From Octopus sinensis (taxonomy: Eukaryota), in NCBI RefSeq assembly GCF_006345805.1, contig NC_043002.1:8866001-8930000 (forward strand): DNA of 64,000 nucleotides, written 5' to 3'. Below are positions 2,758-63,038 of the stretch, piece after piece; the first letter of the stretch is position 1, and each line of letters opens with the position of its first letter. Both the position numbers and the translations under genes were made by a program. The notes under the pieces were generated by a model that saw nothing but the letters and a program-made list of their open reading frames with translations, searched no databases and had not been told where the DNA came from.

Positions 2758-3199
2758 ATCTTTACAGTAAAAAAAAAAGTAGAGAACCCAGCTAATATGT
2801 CGGGGGGGGGGGGGGGGATTTAGCTGCGTTTTCTAGCAGGTTGAACAACCATGTAGCCGCTCCCTCATGGTGTATAAGGTAACAAAGACGCCTTTTGTTT
2901 TCATATTGTCTATTTTAAAAATATATGCAATAATCGCAATAATAAATAATTCAAGGCTTCTTTTGGTTTTGTTTTTGGCGAATTTTCGCATAACAGCTAA
3001 AATATATGCAGCATGGAATTTTGTTAGTGAACATGTCGTGGTCTCAAAGCGACAAAAATATTTTGGCAAATTAAATTTAAATGTTGAAGTGAATCTAACA
3101 GTTTTTGCGTGTTTTTAAATGTTTTATAAACACTTTCCACACTGCAATTGTTTTTGTTTCAGTATACGAACTCAGATCAGGTCACTTGCTATGCAAGTA

Positions 3200-3880
3200 C
3201 ATCACCTAAAAACTAAAATATATTTAATAAGAAATGAAAATTTAAGCGTGACAGCTAAAATATATTTAATAATAAATGATGATCCGTTCCAGAATCTGTT
3301 GATTGGTGTGAGATATGTTTACAGTCTATAATTTTAATTGGTCTGAGTATTTTTGTTTTAATTTTCATTTCTTATTAAATATATTTTAGCTTTCGCATTT
3401 AAATTTTCATTTCTTATCTTTATACATAAAAGTCAAGTTGTGTGTCTGTCTCCTACGATTTAGATTTCTAACTACTCCCACATTTTGCGGTGCAGTTTAA
3501 CCAAAACCGGGTATCTTATAGTCGTGATTCATATCGAGCCCTTCTGGGTATTAGCACGCGTCTACGATGAGTCTACGATTTAAAAAAAAAATTTACCATC
3601 ATTTTTTTCCATTTTAATGCATTTTTCGCTATTATATAAGGGAAGTAACTCTCTAAAAATGTCTACGATGAGTCAACGATTTAAAAAAAAATTTACCATC
3701 ATTTTTTTCCCATTTTTAGTGCAATTTTTTTGCTATTTTTTGGCTATAACTCTCTAAAAATGCTTATATAGTTATTTCCCTTACAAACCCGAGCAACGCC
3801 GGGCAATACTGCTAGTTAAATATATTTTAGCTTTCGCGTTTTAATTTTCATTTCTTATTAAATATATTTTAGCTGTCTCG
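3200..3880. repeat. AT-rich ~40-bp unit array (ttaaatatattttagc...ttttcatttctta): two inverted copies left, about three right, split by a Helitron
   Basis: Units at ~3210-3280 are the reverse complement of units at ~3360-3416 and 3816-3875. Confidence 0.65.
3417..3815 (+). mobile_element. Non-autonomous Helitron
   Basis: 5' TC, 3' hairpin cccg-agcaacgc-cggg then CTAG; inserted between A(3416) and T(3816) with no TSD; removal restores the local repeat unit cttA|Ttaaat. Internal ~100-bp duplication. Confidence 0.85.
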
Positions 3881-4746
3881 AAATAGTTGTTTTTGATTTG
3901 TCAGTTTGCATTGATCCGTAGCAACTCTCGCCTCGGTCAAGCCGTCACGCTTCAATGAAAAAGTGTCTTTTTTTGTTTTCTGTAGGAGAGGGCTGTAAAA
4001 ATACATTAATTACATCGAGCGCCAAAATATACAGAAGCAATTTTTATTTTCATATATAATATATATAAAACATGTACACTTTTTAGAACTTGGTCATTTT
4101 CACATTCGTTCGAAGCTGATCATTCACGCCATAGCTACTTAAGCAAACAAAAAGACGGTACTACTAGCGAACAGTGGTCACGGTGCGCGCACTCGCGCAT
4201 CCACGCTAGTTAGACGTAAGTAGTCGATCCTACAACGGCTTGTGCGTATGTTTGTATTTCAAGGCTGAAGAAAATTAAATAATATTTTTCGAACAAAGTA
4301 AATAAAACGCAAAAGTAAATAATTGGTACTTGTTAATTATCGTGGTCCCGGTTTTGCACACGCGAATTCGCGCATGCGCGTTAACCCCCCCCCCCCCCCT
4401 AAAAAAAAAAGGTGTTGGATTTCACTAAAAATATATATGTGTGTGTGTGTGTGTGTATATATAACATTTTCAATTTTACACAAAAAAATTACATAGTCGC
4501 TTTCCTCGCGGATTTACAGATAAATGAATTAATTACTATTTTACAGAATAAAATTAATGAATTAATTATATAAATTAAATAATTCTTGAAAATTAATTAA
4601 TATTAATAATATTTTTTGAACAAAGTAAATAATTTATAAAACTTGGTTAATTTTTTTTACACAAACGCGAACGTATATAATTTGTGAAACTTTTTTTTTT
4701 TTTACAGACGTATATAATTTGGTAAACTTAATGAATTAATTCTTCT

Positions 4747-5165
4747 CATCATCATCATCGTTTAACGTCCGTTCTCCATGCCAGCATGGGTTGGACGGTT
4801 CGACCGGGGATCTGGGAAGCCAGAAGGCTGCACCAGACTCCAGTCTTATCTGGCAATGTTTCTACAGCTGGATGCCCTTCCTAACGCCAACCACTCCGAG
4901 AGTGTAGTGGGTGCTTTTTACATGCCACCCGCACAGGTGCCAGGCGAGGCTGGCAACGGCCACGGTCGGATTGGTGCCAGTCGAGGCGGCTCTGGCATCG
5001 GCCACGATTCGGATAGTGCTTTTTACGTACCACCAGTCCAGGGGTCCTGGCATTTGCCGGGTGTCACACTTGCCCCAACATGTCTTCGCAAGCAAAGGGG
5101 TTTGGCTTGGGTGCCTGTCGTCGGATGAGGTTCGATATCAACTTCGCTTGCCTCAACAGGTCTTT
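4747..5165 (-). mobile_element. RTE 3'-end (GAT-tailed) insertion in left palindrome arm
   Basis: catcatcatcgtttaacgtccg...catccagctgtaga 3' module; mirrored at 6205-6623. Confidence 0.85.
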
Positions 5166-6204
5166 GTGTATAAATGTATAAATTTTTCGCACTAAATTCT
5201 TTCCGTAGAATTTATCAAAAAACGCGCAAAATTATTCCGTAGAATTTATCAAGTTAAAAAACGCAAAATTAATATATTTTTTGAAATTGCAAATTATTTA
5301 GAATATAAAACAAATGAAGTTAAATTTTAAAAATAAATGTCATATACTTATACTCTGTAAGGTGCTGTGTTCACACTTCAATTTACTATTTTCTAGAAAT
5401 GTTGCTTTTCTAATTGAAACAATTTTTCTCAATCTCCATTTAAAAGTCCATCATGTCTCTTGAGACATATCAAAATGAACAACTTTGAATTACGCGGCGG
5501 CGGTGGTGGTGTGAGGTTCTAATTTTTTTTTCTGATCTCTCTTTGCCCCCTCTTTATCTCAGTTGTTCATTCCGCTGATATTTAGAAAAATTTTCGCGCC
5601 CAATTTTTGTTGTCGCGGGAAAAGATGAACGATTTAAAATAAATATATCTTAATTGTAGTGTGAGAAAGTATATATATTCTGATGACAAAATATATTATC
5701 TTTCAATAACATCCCAAATTTATAGACTATATCGTGTAGGTTTAAGAAATATATATATATATATACACATATATAGCAGAGAATGAAACATCTTTCATCT
5801 GTCTCCTCACCACACCTCCATCTAGGGGGGCAAAGAGAGATCAGAAAAAAAAATTAGAACCTCACACCACCACCGCGTAATTCAAAGTTGTTCATTTTGA
5901 TATGTCTCAAGAGACATGATGGACTTTTAAATGGAGATTGAGAAAAATTGTTTCAATTAGAAAAGCAACATTTCTAGAAAATAGTAAATTGAAGTGTGAA
6001 CACAGCACCTTACAGAGTATAAGTATATGACATTTATTTTTAAAATTTAACTTCATTTGTTTTATATTCTAAATAATTTGCAATTTCAAAAAATATATTA
6101 ATTTTGCGTTTTTTAATTTGATAAATTCTACGGAATAATTTTGCGCGTTTTTTGATAAATTCTACGGAAAGAATTTAGTGCGAAAAATTTATACATTTAT
6201 ACAC

Positions 6205-6623
6205 AAAGACCTGTTGAGGCAAGCGAAGTTGATATCGAACCTCATCCGACGACAGGCACCCATGCCAACCCCCTTTGCTTGCGAAGACATGTTGGGGCAA
6301 GTGTGACACCCGGCAAATGCCAGGACCCCTGGACTGGTGGTACGTAAAAAGCACTATCCGAATCGTGGCCGATGCCAGAGCCGCCTCGACTGGCACCAAT
6401 CCGACCGTGGCCGTTGCCAGCCTCGCCTGGCACCTGTGCGGGTGGCATGTAAAAAGCACCCACTACACTCACGGAGTGGTTGGCGTTAGGAAGGGCATCC
6501 AGCTGTAGAAACATTGCCAGATAAGACTGGAGTCTGGTGCAGCCTTCTGGCTTCCCAGATCCCCGGTCGAACCGTCCAACCCATGCTGGCATGGAGAACG
6601 GACGTTAAACGATGATGATGATG
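6205..6623 (+). mobile_element. RTE 3'-end insertion in right palindrome arm
   Basis: Reverse complement of 4747-5165 with about 3 substitutions. Confidence 0.85.
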
Positions 6624-7089
6624 AGAAGAAATTAATTCATTAAGTTTACCAAATTATATACGTCTGTAAAAAAAAAAAAAGTTTCACAAATTATATACGT
6701 TCGCGTTTGTGTAAAAAAAATTAACCAAGTTTTATAAATTATTTACTTTGTTCAAAAAATATTATTAATATTAATTAATTTTCAAGAATTATTTAATTTT
6801 ATTCTGTAAAATAGTAATTAATTCATTTATCTGTAAATCCGCGAGGAAAGCGACTATGTAATTTTTTTGTGTAAAATTGAAAATGTTATATATACACACA
6901 CACACATATATATTTTTAGTGAAATCCAACACCTTTTTTTTTGGGGGGGGTTAACGCGCATGCGCGAATTCTGCACTGCGCATGCGCAAGTCACCTCGTA
7001 GGATCTCGGGTATCGGGTACCTACGTCTGGCGCGCGCGCGCGCGAATTCGCGTGTGCGAAACCGGGACTACGACAATAGACAAGTACCT

Positions 7090-7345
7090 ATTTTTATAAA
7101 CAAACTATGGTCAGGGTTAGGGTTAAAAAATTAGGTTTAGGATTAGGGTAAGGGTTAGATTTAGGGATAGGGCTAAAAAGTCGCTGTAGGATCGACTGCT
7201 TACGTCTAGCTAGCGCGAGTGCGCGCACCGGGACCACTGTTTCTCTGTCTCTAAGTAAATAAATTATTTTTATAAATAAACTAAGGTTAGGGTTAGGGTT
7301 AAAAAATTAGGTTTAGGATTAGGGTAAGGGTTAGATTTAGGGTTA
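7090..7345 (+). repeat. Degenerate telomere-like (TTAGGG) blocks, duplicated together with the right TIR
   Basis: gggttagggtt...ttagggtaagggttag blocks at ~7092-7152 and ~7284-7340, each followed by the TIR sequence (first copy truncated at ~7241). Confidence 0.8.
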
Positions 7346-8004
7346 GGGTTAAAAAGTCGCTGTAGGATCGACTACTTACGTCTAGCTAGCGCGGATGCGC
7401 GAGTGCGTGCACCGGGACCACTGTTCGCTCGTAGTACCCCAAAAGACTATCTTACTTGAAGGATAGTATATAGTAAGAAATTCGTAAAATCAGCTTCGAA
7501 TGAATAAATAAATCCTACTACTTTCTAAATGCATTTAGTACATCATTGTTCCTCCTGGGGCCGTGTTTGGAAATAAAAACGGTGAAGAGAGAGAGAGAAA
7601 TACATGTCAGACACAACTGATGCATACAAAAGAGAAACAAAGAATCATTTTTGTTAATTTCCGTTTACCTCTCGAATTTCCCGTTCAGAATCCAAATATT
7701 TTTGGAAAGAAGCAAACATAAGCGTCAAATCGGATTCCTGAGCCATTCTGTTTCCTAAGAGAAGACGAATGCTGAGAACATGCGGAGCTGAACTTTTAGA
7801 TTCGTATTGTCAGAGACCCGTTACTCGAGAAGAGGGTGGTGATGGGTATTACGGTGATAATATTTTCGGATCTTTTCGGTTTGAACGGCAGTTTTTTTTT
7901 AAATAATTTCCACGTAACTAAACACTTTTAAACTTCGTATACTGGTAGAATGTGTTTATAAAACATCTTTTTCTCTTGGCTTTATTGAGAAAATTCTATA
8001 GTTT

Positions 8005-37469: not shown

Positions 37470-38110
37470 ACATCATCATCGTCATCATTATCGTTTAACG
37501 TCCGTTTTCCATGCTAGCATGGGTTGGATGGTTCGACTGGGGTCTGGGAAGCCAGGAGGCTGCACCAGGCTCCAGTCTGATCTGGTAGTGTTTCTACAGC
37601 TGGATGCCCTTCCTAATGCCAACCACTCCGTGAGTGTAGTGGGTGCTTTTTACATGCCACCGGCACAGGTGCCAGGGTAGGCTGGCAACGGCCACAAACG
37701 GTTGGTGCTTTTTATGTGCCACCGACACAGAAGCCAGTCAAGGCGGCGCTGGCATCGACCACGTACAGCTTGTGCTTTTTACGTGCCACCAGCACAGGTG
37801 CCAGGGGAGGCTGGAAACAGCCATGATCGGTTGGTACTTTTTACATGCTACCGACACAGAAGCCAGTCAAGGCGGCGCTGGCATCGACCACGTACAGCTG
37901 GTGCTTTTTACGTGCCACCAGCACAGGTGCCAGGGGAGGCTGGCAACATCCACGATCAGTTGGTGCTTTTTACGTGCCACCGACACAGAAGCCAGTCAAG
38001 GTGGTGCTGGCATCGACCACATATGGCTGGTGCTTTTTACATACCACCGGCACAGGTGCCAGGGGAGGCTGGAAACAGTCACGATCGGTTGGTGCTTTTT
38101 ATGTGCCAAA
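37470..38110 (-). mobile_element. RTE 3' end with expanded tandem array (~123-bp dimer units)
   Basis: Terminal module at left, then repeating ggtgctttttac/atgtgccacc units; repeated ORF text in the track. Confidence 0.9.
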
Positions 38111-44884: not shown

Positions 44885-45365
44885 TATGTGGCCAATGCCA
44901 GTACCGCCTTGACTGGCTTCTGTGCCGGTGGCACATAAAAAGCACCAACCAATCGTGGCCATTGCCAGCTTACCCTGGCACCTAAAAAGCACCATCCGTA
45001 CGTGGCCGATGCCAGCATCGGTGGCATGTAAAAACTACCAACTGATCGTGGCCGTTGCCAGCCTCCCCTGGCACGTAAAAAGCACCATCCATTCATGGTC
45101 GATGCCAGCACCACCTTGACTGGCTTCTGTGCTGGTGGCACATAAAAAGCACCAACCGATCGTGGCCGTTGCCAGCCTCCCCTGGCATGTAAAAAGCACC
45201 CGCTACACTCACGGAGTGGTTGGCGTTAGGAAGGGCATCCAGCTGTAGAAACACTGCCAGATCAGATTGGAGCCTGGTGCAGCCTCCTGGCTTCCCAGAC
45301 CCCAGTTGAACCGTCCAAACCATGCTAGCATGGAAAACGGACGTTAAATGATGATGATGATGATA
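44885..45365 (+). mobile_element. RTE 3'-end fragment with tandem array
   Basis: About five gtggcac-taaaaagcacc units then terminal module. Confidence 0.85.
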
Positions 45366-54632: not shown

Positions 54633-55630
54633 TGAAGCTAGTATGCTCCGATGGATGTGTAACGTCAGTGTTCATAATCGACAGAGTGTAAGTACCTTGA
54701 GAGAAAAGTTGAACCTAAGAAGCATCAGTTGTTGTGTGCAAGAGAGACGTTTGCGCTGGTATGGTCATGTGATGAGAATGGCTGAAGATAGTTGTGTGCG
54801 AAAGTGCCACACCCTGGCAGTTGAGGGGACCTGTGGAAGAAGTAGACCCAGGAAAACCTGGGTCGAGGTGGTGAAGCACGACCTTCGAACTTTAGGTCTC
54901 ACCAAGGAAATGACCAGAGACCGAGACCTTTGGAAGTATGCTGTGCGTGAGAAAACCCGGCAAGACCAGTGAGAACAGTCAAAATCAAAATCAAACCAAA
55001 TCAATTCATATATCAGAAAGCAGAACCAAATTGAGGTCGATCAACATCAGTGGGAATTGCAGCTGTGGTTAAGCGAACCATCCGATCGTGGTCGTTGCCG
55101 GCGCCGCCCCGTCTAGCCTCCGTGTCGGTGGCACGTAAAAGCACCATCCGTTCGTGTCCGTTGCCAGCCTCGCCTGGCCCCCGTGCCGGTGACACGTAAA
55201 AGCACCATCCGTTCGTGGCCGTTTGCCAGCTCTGTCTGGCCCCCGTGTCGGTGGCACGTAAAAGCACCATCCGTTCGTGGCCGTTTGCCAGCTCCGTCTA
55301 GCCTCCGTGTCGGTGGCACGTAAAAGCACCATCCGTTCGTGTCCGTTGCCAGCCTCGCCTGGCCCCCGTGCCGGTGACACGTAAAAGCACCATCCGTTCG
55401 TGGCCGTTTGCTAGCTCTGTTTGGCACCTGTGCAGGTGGCACGTAAAAAGCACCCACTACACTCACGGAGTGGTTGGCGTTAGGAAGGGCATCCAGCCGT
55501 AGAAACACTGCCAGATCTGACTGGGCCTGATGAAGCCTTCCAGCTTCACAGACCCCAGTTGAACTGTCCAACCCATGCTAGCATGGAAGACGGATGCTAA
55601 ATGATGATGATGATGATGATGATGATGATA
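54633..55630 (+). mobile_element. 5'-truncated RTE LINE with six-unit 3'UTR array
   Basis: EASMLRWMC...RRLRWYGHV...GRSRPRKTW...DRDLWK; tandem units 55076-55453; (GAT)n tail. Confidence 0.92.
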
Positions 55631-58104: not shown

Positions 58105-58584
58105 ATAATAAAAAGCACCATCCGTTCGTGGCCGTTGCCAGCCTCGCCTGGCCCCCGTGCTGGTGGCACGTAAAAAGCACCATCCGTTCGTGGCTGTTGC
58201 CAGCCTCATTTGGCCTCCATGCCGGTAGCACGTAAAAAGCACCATCCATTCGTGGCTGTTGCCAGCCTCATTTGGCCTCCATGCCGGTAGCACGTAAAAA
58301 GCACCATCCGTTCGTGGCTGTTGCCAGCCTCGCCTGGCCCCCGTGCCGGTGGCACGTAAAAAGCACCATCCGATCGTGGCCGTTTGCCAGCCTCGTCTGG
58401 CACCTGTGCCAGTGGCACGTAAAAAGCACCCACTACACTCATGGAGTGGTTGGCGTTAGGAAGGGCATCCAGCTGTAGAAACATTGCCAGATCAGACTGG
58501 AGCCTGGTGCAGCCTTCTGGCTTCCCAGACCCCAGTTGAACCGTCCAACCCATGCTAGCATGGAAAGCGGACGTTAAACGATGA

Positions 58585-61973: not shown

Positions 61974-62274
61974 GGTACTTCTAGCGAACAGTGGTCCCGG
62001 TGCGCGCATCCACGCTAGCTAGTCGTAAGTAGTCGATCCTACGACGACTACCTTGGAAAGTAAATAAAACACAAAATAAATAATTTTTTCTGCACAAAGT
62101 AAATAATTTTTGTTAAACAAAGTAAATAAAACACAAAAACACAAAGTAAATAATTTTTTAAATAAAGTAAATAACACAAAAACACAAAGTAAGGATCGAC
62201 TAGTCATGACTAGCTGGCGCGGATGCGCGAGTACGCGAGGGCGCGCACCGGGACCGCTGTTCTCAAGTAGTGCC
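61974..62274. mobile_element. MITE family B, short copy
   Basis: Same TIR as 4157-7438; 8-bp TSD tttgaatg / tttgaacg (one CpG-type difference); core of aaagtaaataa repeats. Confidence 0.85.
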
Positions 62275-63038
62275 TTTGAACGTATTTTATACTTCTTGCT
62301 ATTAAGTTTGTGGTACGGAATACATTTAAATTCTTATCACTTTTGGATCGCATCTCGTCATTCTGTTGACAGAGAAGTCAGCTGTGGTTAGACAAGATAT
62401 GGCGTTGAATATACAAATGTGAGAAAGTATTTCCTTTTTCTTAATATATCCATCATATATAGTGTTTTACTTTCCTTAGCAGCTGTATTGCTGATGGCAA
62501 AATATTATTGCTCGTCATAAATCGAGCCATAACCACAATAAACTATTGAACAAACATCTTTAGTATAAACACCATTTAGCAACCCAAGGCAATTTAACCG
62601 AGAAAAAGTCAATGCTAGGGAATAAAGTATTCAGGTTAAAAGATTTAGTTAGAAAAACTGGATCTGATTAAATTTCTTCTAACCATTTGAAGTATTTTAG
62701 GTTTTCACCTTTTATCTATTTTTATTTTTTTCAAATTTTCTATACTGTTGTAGTTATGTATGCTGATGAGACAAAATTGGCTTTTTTTTGGTTGTTTTTT
62801 TTTAGAAATTAATACATTACAACTATTTAAAGTTATGTAATTTCAGCCAATCAAAAACCGTCGTTGCCGTCATATCAGAAGTCGCAACTGTCGTTATGGC
62901 AATCGTGTTTTTTTTTTCCAATGTTTACCCATATGCCGATGACATGAGAATGAAAACATTACAGAACTTCTTGTTTTTTAAAGAATTTAATGAAAAAAAA
63001 AAAATTTTTTTTTCTCAAATTACGCTATACCTGCCTTT

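What the first reader, a model, noticed from the sequence alone, without database searches (positions are those of the whole stretch)
4157..7438. 3.3-kb fold-back element: a 2.6-kb palindrome inside GG-ended TIRs, with the same retro-insertion in both arms
Seen: outer ~85-bp TIRs with a 9-bp near-perfect TSD enclose ~1.17-kb inverted arms and a 275-bp spacer. Both arms carry the same ~415-bp RTE 3' fragment at the mirror position, differing by about 3 substitutions. A 301-bp copy of the same TIR family at 61974 lacks all of this. The arms share the aacaaagtaaataa motif with the outer element. The arms also begin TTAA-CCC and end GGG-TTAA, inside a 17-bp palindromic flank. Inference: either the arm was duplicated after the retro-insertion, or arm-to-arm conversion copied it. 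That would make this a non-autonomous element that grows by intramolecular inverted duplication and homogenises its cargo, as Foldback/Galileo-type elements do. Alternatively, it is a TTAA-targeting (piggyBac-like) element with giant TIRs nested in a MITE.
Basis: partly seen in the sequence, partly recalled or inferred. Interest (0 to 1): 0.75.

Follow-up and report, generated by a model that had tools for sequence, protein, structure and literature searches.

The report
Hairpin-shaped Merlin transposon inside a MITE
The palindrome is one copy of an octopus family of defective Merlin "cut-and-paste" transposons built as two mirror-image 1.3-kb arms, sitting inside a small related transposon; it is a real and tidy example of a fold-back element, but a known kind of object and not a piggyBac-like one.

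Summary
The unit boundaries and the interpretation need correcting. The mobile unit is window 4325-7088, not the TTAA-to-TTAA core. Its ends read GGTACTTGT...ACAAGTACC. It belongs to a family with 138 near-exact termini in this 2.72-Gb genome. About half of the paired termini lie 2.65-3.0 kb apart, which is the full palindrome. Other copies carry clean 8- or 9-bp target duplications.

The TTAA-CCC motif is internal to every copy. No empty TTAA-centred site exists in the genome.

Elements with the same or near-identical termini enclose a Merlin (DDE_Tnp_IS1595) transposase, one with an intact 309-aa frame. A 98-bp piece of that element lies in the fold-back's spacer. The outer roughly 400-bp MITE shares the terminal motif and the 8-9-bp duplications.

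The LINE 3' end is present in both arms of every full copy, so it is a family trait and not an event at this site. Substitutions that mark subfamilies are mirrored on both arms, which shows arm-to-arm copying in the propagating lineage. Deletion derivatives break near the palindrome centre.

The window copy is atypical: it has no target duplication, its left tip is of the autonomous type, and about 21 bp of the host MITE are missing.

The parts
4148..4156 (.). Left target-site duplication of the outer MITE (9 nt; matches 7439-7447 at 8 of 9)
   Evidence: Other copies of this MITE family mostly have 9-bp duplications and sometimes 8-bp ones.
4157..4324 (+). Left part of the outer Merlin-type MITE, including the 85-nt TIR at 4157-4241
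   Evidence: Genome matches to a 4157-4380 probe stop at 4324. There were 1607 candidates at 84-89% identity.
4325..7088 (.). The fold-back element proper: a non-autonomous Merlin derivative of 2764 bp (family norm 2.85-2.9 kb)
   Evidence: Homology to 20 other loci begins at 4322-4325 and ends at 7088-7097. The element has no ORF above 116 aa and no transposase.
4325..4380 (+). Left terminus. It is atypical: 95% identical to termini of transposase-carrying elements and 89% to the fold-back family
   Evidence: The first 27 nt differ by 1 from the autonomous-type tip and by 3 from the family tip.
4325..5550 (+). Left arm (1226 nt). It lacks the 78 bp present in the right arm.
   Evidence: The same short junction occurs in at least two other copies.
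4381..4384 (.). TTAA followed by a C run. It is internal to the arm and not an element end (mirror at 6951-6954).
   Evidence: Alignments to other copies are continuous across it. The empty-site pattern has 0 genome matches.
4679..5220 (-). 542-bp module holding the LINE 3' UTR (about 4746-5171, (GAT)n tail outward). Mirror of 6148-6690.
   Evidence: Contigs in the reads skip exactly this block. The junction without it has 48 genome matches. LINE identity is shown.
5551..5825 (.). Spacer (275 nt), conserved in the family. Positions 5617-5712 derive from the interior of the autonomous Merlin.
   Evidence: Spacer probe: 636 candidates, of which 40 were scored, at 83-100%. The 98-bp match to L071:2474-2569 is 94-95% identical, E 2e-36.
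5826..7088 (-). Right arm (1263 nt) with a family-typical terminus
6199..6624 (+). LINE 3' UTR copy in the right arm, ending in a (GAT)n tail
   Evidence: At least 10 dispersed copies in the window share the 3' end near 6624 and have varied 5' ends. In L054 the same sequence starts about 35 nt after the stop codon of a LINE ORF2-like frame.
7089..7438 (+). Right part of the outer MITE. It has a 176-bp tandem duplication (7089-7225, 7265-7401), telomere-like TTAGGG-type tracts, and the right TIR at 7354-7438.
7439..7447 (.). Right target-site duplication of the outer MITE
61974..62275 (+). Uninterrupted 302-bp copy of the outer MITE family, with an 8-bp duplication (7 of 8)

Best explanation
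Window 4325-7088 is one copy of a non-autonomous Merlin-superfamily DNA transposon. Its body is a palindrome of two roughly 1.3-kb arms around a roughly 280-bp spacer. It lies inside a roughly 400-bp MITE that shares the terminal motif GGTACT-N11-GTGGTCCCGG.

Shown:
- The whole palindrome is the transposed unit, because other copies carry 8- or 9-bp target duplications outside both tips.
- The LINE 3' UTR in both arms is a family trait.
- Elements with the same tips enclose a DDE_Tnp_IS1595 transposase.
- The spacer keeps a piece of that element's interior.

Inferred:
- A low-copy autonomous Merlin supplies the transposase in trans.
- The family arose once. An internally deleted Merlin that had already picked up a 5'-truncated LINE copy underwent an inverted duplication.
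- The propagating lineage kept its arms alike by arm-to-arm copying. That could be intramolecular conversion, or repair of a snapped-back single strand.
- The same snap-back explains why deletion derivatives break at the palindrome centre.
- The window copy is a rearranged member. Its left tip comes from an autonomous-type element. Both the target duplication and about 21 bp of the host MITE were lost.
For: Family and boundaries:
- The arm probe gave 526 candidates. Of these, 40 were scored, nearly all at 95-99% identity and many in inverted pairs about 2.3 kb apart.
- Homology to 20 loci spans 4325-7088.
- The exact family tip, allowing one mismatch, occurs 69 times forward and 69 times reverse, against 0 for the reversed control.
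- Of 35 adjacent tip pairs, 16 are 2.65-3.0 kb apart, 15 are under 2 kb and 4 are over 3.9 kb.

Target duplications:
- Of 18 copies with both tips in hand, 12 have perfect duplications (7 of 8 bp, 5 of 9 bp). Two lie in microsatellites, two match at 7 of 8, and two have none.
- The outer MITE family shows 9 bp, or sometimes 8 bp.

Merlin link:
- PF12762 gave 690 candidates in the genome.
- The 309-aa frame in L071 scores 1e-20 against PF12762.
- Close relatives of that frame (63-100% aa identity) lie between GGTAC tip pairs at C8504:24811-33206, C4:131877045-131881345, C2:39204388-39210569, C11666:10279-16475, C14:52346862-52350797, C1:110595691-110600524 and C29:4964978-4970269.
- L071:2474-2569 matches the fold-back spacer at 94-95%.
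- Merlin is defined by terminal 5'-GG and 8- or 9-bp duplications (PMC8101967).

Arm-to-arm copying:
- Divergence between copies is the same for same-side and opposite-side arms (1.08% against 1.09%).
- Of 21 shared variants, 17 sit on both arms of at least one carrier.
- On gap-free columns there are 26 both-arm carriers against 10.4 expected, with 0 of 10,000 permutations reaching 26. Seven of the 11 variants are transversions.

Centre breaks: in 5 to 6 of 7 one-arm derivatives the inner breakpoint lies within about 110 bp of the arm's inner end.

Reads: independent short-read contigs bridge 4156|4157, 7438|7439 and 7088|7089 at single-copy depth.
Against: - Their target duplications and full TIRs, and the link between tips and ORF, rest on coordinates. 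Only L071 is available as sequence.
- Mobilisation in trans is inferred, not tested.
- The arms, at 1.3 kb, are far beyond the 24-462 bp reported for Merlin TIRs.
- The window copy itself has no target duplication and has a hybrid left tip, so this copy may not have arrived by a simple insertion.
- Arm analysis rests on 11 copies chosen as the best matches to the window's arm.
- Short-read polishing of an assembly could blur differences between the arms of a copy, though it would not create variants shared across loci.
- No read or contig spans the whole structure.
Confidence: 0.85

Rival explanations
1. Local growth. At this very site a short element doubled itself by intramolecular inverted duplication after a LINE inserted, or conversion copied the LINE from one arm to the other here.
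For: The two arms are nearly identical, with 6 substitutions in about 1.13 kb, and carry the same LINE piece.
Against: The same arms, spacer borders and LINE piece occur in all 11 full copies at other loci, each with its own flanks and target duplication. The structure therefore arrived ready-made.
Confidence: 0.02
2. A piggyBac-like element that targets TTAA and has giant TIRs (TTAA-CCC...GGG-TTAA) inserted into the centre of a short palindromic MITE.
For: The sequence reads TTAA-CCC and GGG-TTAA, and the flanks form a perfect palindrome (I11).
Against: All family copies include the sequence outside the TTAA as one continuous block out to 4325 and 7088. Target duplications lie outside those tips, are 8-9 bp long and are not TTAA. 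The predicted empty site (flank-TTAA-flank, 30 nt, up to 2 mismatches) has no match in 2.72 Gb.
Confidence: 0.01
3. Assembly fold-back artefact: the palindrome does not exist in the animal's DNA.
For: No single contig or read in the runs examined spans the structure. Palindromes are a known artefact of some long-read libraries.
Against: At least 16 tip pairs at palindrome length lie on many chromosomes. Eleven sequenced copies have conserved spacer borders, and the great majority carry matching target duplications outside both tips. Contigs from other runs bridge arm-spacer borders (records 27 and 28) and the inner-outer junction at 7088|7089.
Confidence: 0.01
4. The family is moved by a different superfamily with 8-9-bp duplications (Mutator-like or similar), and the Merlin frames between GGTAC tips are coincidental.
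For: MULE domains exist in the genome (215 candidates). Fold-back elements elsewhere belong to the Mutator or P groups (PMC3169594, PMC3573991).
Against: Seven tip pairs enclose the same Merlin transposase family, and the rare autonomous-type tip has only 6 sites in the genome. The spacer holds 98 bp of that Merlin's interior. None of 12 MULE loci carried the tip motif.
Confidence: 0.04
5. The mirrored variants come from repeated fresh palindrome formation from one-armed copies, not from conversion between arms.
For: One-armed derivatives are common, about half of the tip pairs. Each new inverted duplication would make identical arms.
Against: The spacer and its two borders are the same in all 11 full copies, which points to one origin. 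L024 and L029 have arms that are mosaic for subfamily markers, as expected from partial conversion or recombination.
Confidence: 0.1

Closest known systems
Merlin superfamily of DNA transposons (IS1016/IS1595-related; Feschotte 2004, as summarised in PMC8101967)
   Same: Terminal 5'-GG. Target duplications of 8 or 9 bp. DDE_Tnp_IS1595 transposase in elements with the same tips. MITE-like non-autonomous relatives.
   Different: Reported Merlin TIRs are 24-462 bp. Here the inverted arms are about 1.3 kb and make up 90% of the element. I found no paper in the searchable library describing a fold-back-type Merlin. A 2026 Octopus vulgaris repeat annotation lists Merlin without mentioning palindromes or fold-back forms.
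Galileo '2-TIR' copies (P superfamily, Drosophila; PMC3573991)
   Same: Non-autonomous copies made almost wholly of TIRs up to about 1.25 kb. The longest TIRs occur in copies without transposase. TIRs grow by recruiting internal sequence. Chimeric copies have divergent TIRs and no matching target duplication, as the window copy does.
   Different: Galileo belongs to a different superfamily (P, THAP transposase, 7-bp duplications). Its TIRs hold long internal tandem repeats, whereas these arms are a mosaic of unique sequence, MITE-like modules and a LINE piece.
Drosophila Foldback, Tetris and nematode Tm1 (Mutator/Foldback group; PMC4079207, PMC3169594)
   Same: Fold-back architecture, a 9-bp class of duplication, and mostly non-coding copies.
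   Different: The arms are not built of tandem subrepeats. The partner transposase is Merlin, not Mutator-like.
piggyBac
   Same: Only the local letters TTAA-CCC...GGG-TTAA.
   Different: Those letters are not at the element ends. Duplications are 8-9 bp, not TTAA. No empty TTAA site exists.
Other palindromic Merlin elements noted earlier in this scan of the same genome (s1-110907, s1-104362, s1-109328)
   Same: s1-110907 describes a 2.9-kb Merlin hairpin with 1.3-kb arms, most likely the same family. Others describe a 3.4-kb palindrome with two transposase genes. I saw inverted transposase pairs by coordinates.
   Different: Those are unchecked AI notes on other loci. Here the copy is nested in a related MITE and is rearranged. 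The arm-mirroring and centre-breakpoint analyses are new to this report as far as the notes show.

Membership tests
Merlin superfamily | TIRs begin with 5'-GG | tested here: met
   Both the inner family and the outer MITE begin GGTAC. The definition comes from PMC8101967.
Merlin superfamily | Target-site duplications of 8 or 9 bp | tested here: met
   Inner family: 7 copies with perfect 8 bp and 5 with perfect 9 bp, of 18. Outer MITE: 9 bp in about 10 copies and 8 bp in 2 of 17. The window's inner copy itself has none.
Merlin superfamily | Autonomous members encode a DDE_Tnp_IS1595 transposase between the same ends | tested here: met
   Seven tip pairs enclose one transposase family. The L071 frame of 309 aa scores 1e-20 against PF12762. 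The test is by coordinates, because the elements' full sequences could not be fetched.
Merlin superfamily | TIR length within the described range (24-462 bp) | tested here: not met
   The arms are 1226 and 1263 nt here and about 1300 nt in other copies. This is a descriptive range rather than a criterion for exclusion.
Merlin superfamily | Excision and insertion by a Merlin transposase | not testable with these tools
   This needs a transposition assay.
Foldback / Galileo-type elements (as an architecture) | Very long TIRs that make up most of a mostly non-coding element | tested here: met
   The arms make up 90% of 2764 bp. There is no ORF above 116 aa.
Foldback / Galileo-type elements (as an architecture) | TIRs built of internal tandem subrepeats | tested here: not met
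   Only short two-copy direct repeats of 22-44 nt were found in the arms.
Foldback / Galileo-type elements (as families) | P-superfamily (Galileo) or Mutator-like (FB, Tm1) transposase partner | tested here: not met
   The partner is Merlin. MULE loci lack the tip motif.
piggyBac | TTAA target duplication directly outside CCC...GGG element ends | tested here: not met
   Homology between copies continues 56-134 nt beyond the TTAA. The empty site is absent.
MITE (outer element 4157-4324 + 7089-7438) | Short, non-coding, with TIRs and target duplication, and high copy number | tested here: met
   Copies are 246-413 bp (one of 717 bp holds an insertion). There were 1607 candidates. The tip motif has 2225 exact genome matches against 0 for the control.
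RTE clade of LINEs (the piece in the arms) | Derives from a non-LTR retrotransposon: common 3' end, varied 5' truncation, follows an ORF2 | tested here: met
   Searches show the shared 3' end at about 6624 with a (GAT)n tail. In L054 the sequence follows the stop of a 185-aa LINE-like frame. The k-mer depth is roughly 100,000 times single copy.
RTE clade of LINEs (the piece in the arms) | Reverse transcriptase / endonuclease placing it in the RTE clade | tested here: inconclusive
   Pfam gave no hit for the C-terminal frame, and the protein atlas gave unnamed clusters. To my own knowledge, the C-terminal motif (RLRWYGHV...GRSRPRKTW) resembles the RTE/BovB tail. That is a lead only.

The most novel reading that the evidence does not exclude
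The family is a self-homogenising hairpin transposon. Each round of transposition or gap repair passes through a single-stranded snap-back of the two arms. Mismatch correction there mirrors new mutations onto both arms, and failed repair gives the centre-broken one-armed copies. If so, Merlin in octopus would have produced fold-back elements by a route independent of the P and Mutator groups. The hundred or so 1.3-kb perfect hairpins would also be a ready source of long double-stranded RNA for the animal's very active A-to-I editing or small-RNA systems.
Probability: 0.15. Interest if true: 0.65.

Novelty: new variant of a known kind. Interest (0 to 1): 0.4.

Why it matters
- It extends the fold-back body plan, known from P-type (Galileo) and Mutator-type (FB, Tm1) transposons, to the Merlin superfamily. 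Described Merlin TIRs stop at a few hundred bases.
- The family gives clean material for two questions. One is how long inverted arms stay alike: mirrored subfamily markers stand against many one-arm private mutations. The other is how palindromes break, since the deletion breakpoints cluster at the centre.
- In practice, about a hundred 2.9-kb perfect hairpins are hazards for assembly and read mapping. They are also candidate sources of double-stranded RNA in a genome known for heavy RNA editing.
- For this window specifically, the result is mostly a correction. The feature is an inherited family structure and not a local event.

Tried and rejected
I worked from coordinates afterwards.
- The twelve best Merlin loci and twelve MULE loci (each with 1.5-kb flanks) did not carry the GGTAC tip within reach, apart from one unrelated MITE in L065. 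Two local Merlins, L069 and L070, have different tips (GGCGATATCG...) with 9-bp duplications.
- tblastn of the Merlin and MULE frames against the window and the first 60 loci found nothing.
- In-situ homogenisation of resident copies was looked for. Divergence within a copy (median 0.47%) is only modestly below divergence between copies (1.08%). Private variants are 69 one-armed against 3 two-armed. So there is no strong evidence for conversion after insertion.
- A palindrome lacking the LINE module was looked for. The 48 junction matches are almost all unpaired. One pair lies 3.3 kb apart, which is not the expected 0.9 kb.
- ARAGORN found no tRNA-like head in the region, so a tRNA-SINE reading of the retro-piece has no support.
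- Pfam and the protein atlas did not place the LINE frame in a clade.
The joint 4313>7251 in three runs has multi-copy depth and reflects other MITE copies, not an empty allele here.
Full report
**1. What is in the sequence**

- An 85-nt inverted repeat at 4157-4241 and 7354-7438 is 92% complementary. It is flanked by 9-mers that agree at 8 of 9 positions.
- Inside it lie arms of 1170 and 1129 nt (4381-5550 and 5826-6954) around a 275-nt spacer.
- The arms differ by 6 substitutions and five indel sites.
- A 302-bp copy of the outer element without any insertion sits at 61974-62275.

Two things were missed.
- The inverted repeat continues beyond the TTAA out to 4325 and 7088 (I6). The left side lacks 78 bp that lie between two copies of a 10-nt direct repeat on the right side.
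- The right half of the outer element carries a 176-bp tandem duplication.

**2. The palindrome is a family, and its ends are at 4325 and 7088**

- A 361-nt arm probe found 526 candidate sites in the 2.72-Gb genome. Of these, 40 were scored, nearly all at 95-99% identity, and many lie in inverted pairs about 2.3 kb apart.
- I fetched twenty loci. Their homology to the window begins at 4322-4325 and ends at 7088-7097. It runs without a break through the TTAA-CCC motif.
- All copies end GGTACTTGT...ACAAGTACC.
- Of 18 copies with both tips in hand, 12 have perfect target duplications directly outside the tips (7 of 8 bp, 5 of 9 bp). Two lie in microsatellites, two match at 7 of 8, and two have none.
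- The exact 27-nt tip, allowing one mismatch, occurs 69 times on each strand and never in the reversed control.
- Among the first 100 tips listed, 35 form adjacent pairs. Sixteen are 2.65-3.0 kb apart (full palindromes), fifteen are under 2 kb, and four are over 3.9 kb.
- The spacer is conserved with the same borders in all 11 full copies. A spacer probe gave 636 candidates.
- The element has no ORF longer than 116 aa and no transposase.

Together these results rule out an assembly artefact, a local duplication event and a TTAA-bounded element. The direct test of the last idea also failed. The predicted empty site (flank, TTAA, flank; 30 nt, up to 2 mismatches) has no match in the genome.

**3. 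Superfamily and partner**

- The inner family and the outer MITE share the tip motif GGTACT-N11-GTGGTCCCGG. It has 2225 exact matches in the genome against none for the control, and it marks several MITE families.
- The outer family has about 1600 candidate copies of 250-420 bp. Its duplications are mostly 9 bp and sometimes 8 bp.
- Terminal GG with 8- or 9-bp duplications is the published signature of Merlin (PMC8101967).
- The genome holds many Merlin transposase domains (PF12762: 690 candidates, 150 over the cut-off).
- One transposase family lies between GGTAC tip pairs at seven loci. The pair at C4:131877045/131881345 has the exact fold-back-type tip on both sides. It is 4.3 kb long and holds a 293-aa open frame that is 97% identical to L071.
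- The element at C8504:24811-33206 holds the intact 309-aa frame, available to me as L071 (PF12762, E 1e-20).
- The other enclosing pairs are on C2 (6.2 kb), C11666 (6.2 kb), C14 (3.9 kb), C1 (4.8 kb) and C29 (5.3 kb).
- L071:2474-2569, just upstream of the transposase frame, matches the fold-back spacer (window 5617-5712) at 94-95% over 98 bp.

The fold-back family is therefore an internally deleted relative of this Merlin, sharing its tips. Mobilisation in trans is inferred.

**4. The retro-element piece**

- The piece at 6199-6624, mirrored at 4746-5171, ends in a (GAT)n tail.
- At least ten dispersed copies in the window share that 3' end and have varied 5' starts.
- Its core has a k-mer depth about 100,000 times that of the single-copy flanks.
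- In L054 the same sequence starts about 35 nt after the stop codon of a 185-aa frame that looks like the C-terminus of a LINE ORF2.

It is therefore the 3' UTR of a heavily 5'-truncated LINE copy. The RTE label is plausible from the C-terminal motif (my own knowledge), but the tools did not confirm it.

- The piece lies in a 542-543-bp block (4679-5220 and 6148-6690) that some contigs skip.
- The junction without the block has 48 matches in the genome. Almost all are unpaired.
- Two of them lie about 70 bp inside the end of a small ordinary MITE with a different GGTAC tip.
- No palindrome lacking the block was found.

The simpler reading is that the arm, LINE piece included, existed before the inverted duplication that made the family. 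All full copies carry the piece in both arms, so nothing about it is specific to this locus.

**5. Do the arms copy each other?**

I oriented 11 full copies by their spacer and aligned the 22 arms.
- Divergence between copies is the same for same-side and opposite-side arms (1.08% and 1.09%). No difference is fixed between the left and right arms.
- Within copies the arms differ by 0.23-1.55%, with a median of 0.47%.
- There are 69 variants private to one arm of one copy, and 3 private to both arms of one copy.
- Of 21 variants shared by several copies, 17 sit on both arms of at least one carrier. Only 4 are always one-sided.
- On gap-free columns, shared variants are carried on both arms 26 times against 10.4 expected if arms were independent. 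None of 10,000 permutations reached 26. Seven of the 11 variants are transversions, so recurrent CpG change is not the cause.

A substitution arises on one arm. Finding it at the mirror position in whole sub-lineages, with a single spacer class, means it was copied across before those copies were made. The many one-armed private variants show that this is slow or absent in resident copies. I therefore cannot say whether the copying is tied to transposition or simply reflects a long-lived source copy. L024 and L029 have arms that are mosaic for subfamily markers, as partial conversion or recombination would give.

**6. Deletion derivatives**

About half of the tip pairs are short, and ten of them are 1.15-1.75 kb. 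In seven sequenced derivatives, one arm is kept almost whole. In 5 to 6 of the 7, the inner breakpoint lies within about 110 bp of the arm's inner end. Only 54-460 bp of the other end remain. Breaks that cluster at the palindrome centre fit two known processes: stalling of repair synthesis when the new strand snaps back, or cutting of a hairpin tip. This is inference.

**7. The window copy is not a typical member**

- It has no target duplication.
- Its left 56 nt are 95% identical to the tips of the transposase-carrying elements but 89% to the fold-back family. Its first 27 nt are one change from a tip variant that has only five other sites in the genome.
- Aligned to intact copies of the outer MITE, the two flanks of the insertion are not adjacent. 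About 21 bp of the MITE are missing and at most one base is duplicated.

A sequence of events that fits all three facts:
1. An autonomous-type element (or a derivative) and a fold-back element inserted a few tens of bases apart in the A+T-rich middle of the MITE.
2. Recombination between their similar left ends then removed everything in between.

Galileo shows the same signature in its chimeric copies: divergent TIRs and unlike flanking repeats (PMC3573991). This scenario is unverified.

The 78-bp shortfall of the left arm recurs in at least two other copies (L033). It is therefore an inherited or recurrent variant and was not mirrored between arms.

**8. Reads**

Only short-read contigs were served.
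- Contigs from three differently labelled organisms bridge the left flank into the outer MITE.
- Contigs from four bridge the right flank. All are at single-copy depth, so the MITE insertion is shared among these samples.
- One contig of the best-holding run bridges 7088|7089 at single-copy depth. That run may be the assembly's own source.
- Contigs of two other runs bridge the arm-spacer borders.
- Nothing spans the whole structure.
- No run on record as RNA holds the stretch, so expression, small RNAs and editing remain untested.

**9. Comparison and novelty**

As an architecture this is a fold-back element like Galileo 2-TIR copies or FB. By descent it is Merlin. Its arms are about three times the longest Merlin TIRs on record.
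- I found no paper in the searchable library describing such a Merlin.
- A 2026 repeat annotation of Octopus vulgaris lists Merlin only as two recently active families.
- Earlier notes of this scan identify the genome as an octopus. One note (s1-110907) already describes a 2.9-kb Merlin hairpin with 1.3-kb arms at another locus, and others describe palindromic two-gene Merlins. These notes are unchecked, and the first agrees with what I derived independently.

I rate the feature a new variant of a known kind and of moderate interest. The local-event reading and the piggyBac reading are wrong. The family-level evidence for arm-to-arm copying and centre-directed breakage is the part worth following up.

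Noticed in passing
window 7105-7175 and 7283-7352; same region in L043, L049, L057, L058: The outer MITE family carries a degenerate telomere-like tract (TTAGGG/TTAGG-type units) in its right half. It is conserved across copies and varies in length.
   Followed up: partly
window 7089-7225 and 7265-7401: A 176-bp tandem duplication (94%) of the right half of the outer MITE begins exactly at the fold-back's right end. The first unit ends in a truncated extra copy of the MITE's TIR (7178-7241).
   Followed up: partly
window 58115-58367, 37772-38095, 55141-55391, 44906-45179: Short tandem arrays of 62-68-bp units derive from the same LINE 3' UTR that sits in the arms, each followed by the LINE's 3' end. 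This looks like the start of a satellite from a retro-element tail.
   Followed up: no
G000 C5:62817868/62819541, C18:28004992/28006665, C18:14979478/14981186, C4:59165327/59166368: Merlin transposase frames occur in head-to-head inverted pairs 1-1.7 kb apart. This points to palindromic elements with two transposase genes in other Merlin families of this genome.
   Followed up: partly
L071:186-1406 and 3070-3387: The transposase-carrying Merlin has a roughly 300-bp unit three times in tandem on one side of the gene and once inverted on the other side. Long internal inverted repeats are thus already present in the autonomous relative.
   Followed up: no
G000 C1, first 100 matches of the tip motif: Several distinct MITE families share GGTACT-N11-GTGGTCCCGG. 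The commonest inner 11-mer on C1 is ACTTAAGAAGA, in elements of about 140-270 bp. Together they give 2225 exact tips.
   Followed up: no
L051:1501-2217; window 43043, 56217, 57718: One outer-MITE copy holds a roughly 370-bp insertion of another repeat, whose 30-nt segment (AGTACTGGGCTTACAAAGAATAAGTCCCGG) also occurs three times in the window.
   Followed up: no
L054:830-1387 (- strand): A 185-aa open frame with a LINE ORF2-like C-terminus lies directly upstream of the 3' UTR family found in the arms. It is a handle for recovering the full LINE.
   Followed up: partly
window 3900-7700: Six runs guessed to be RNA hold 27-31% of the sampled words of this stretch. This is a weak hint that some family member or the LINE tail is transcribed.
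   Followed up: no
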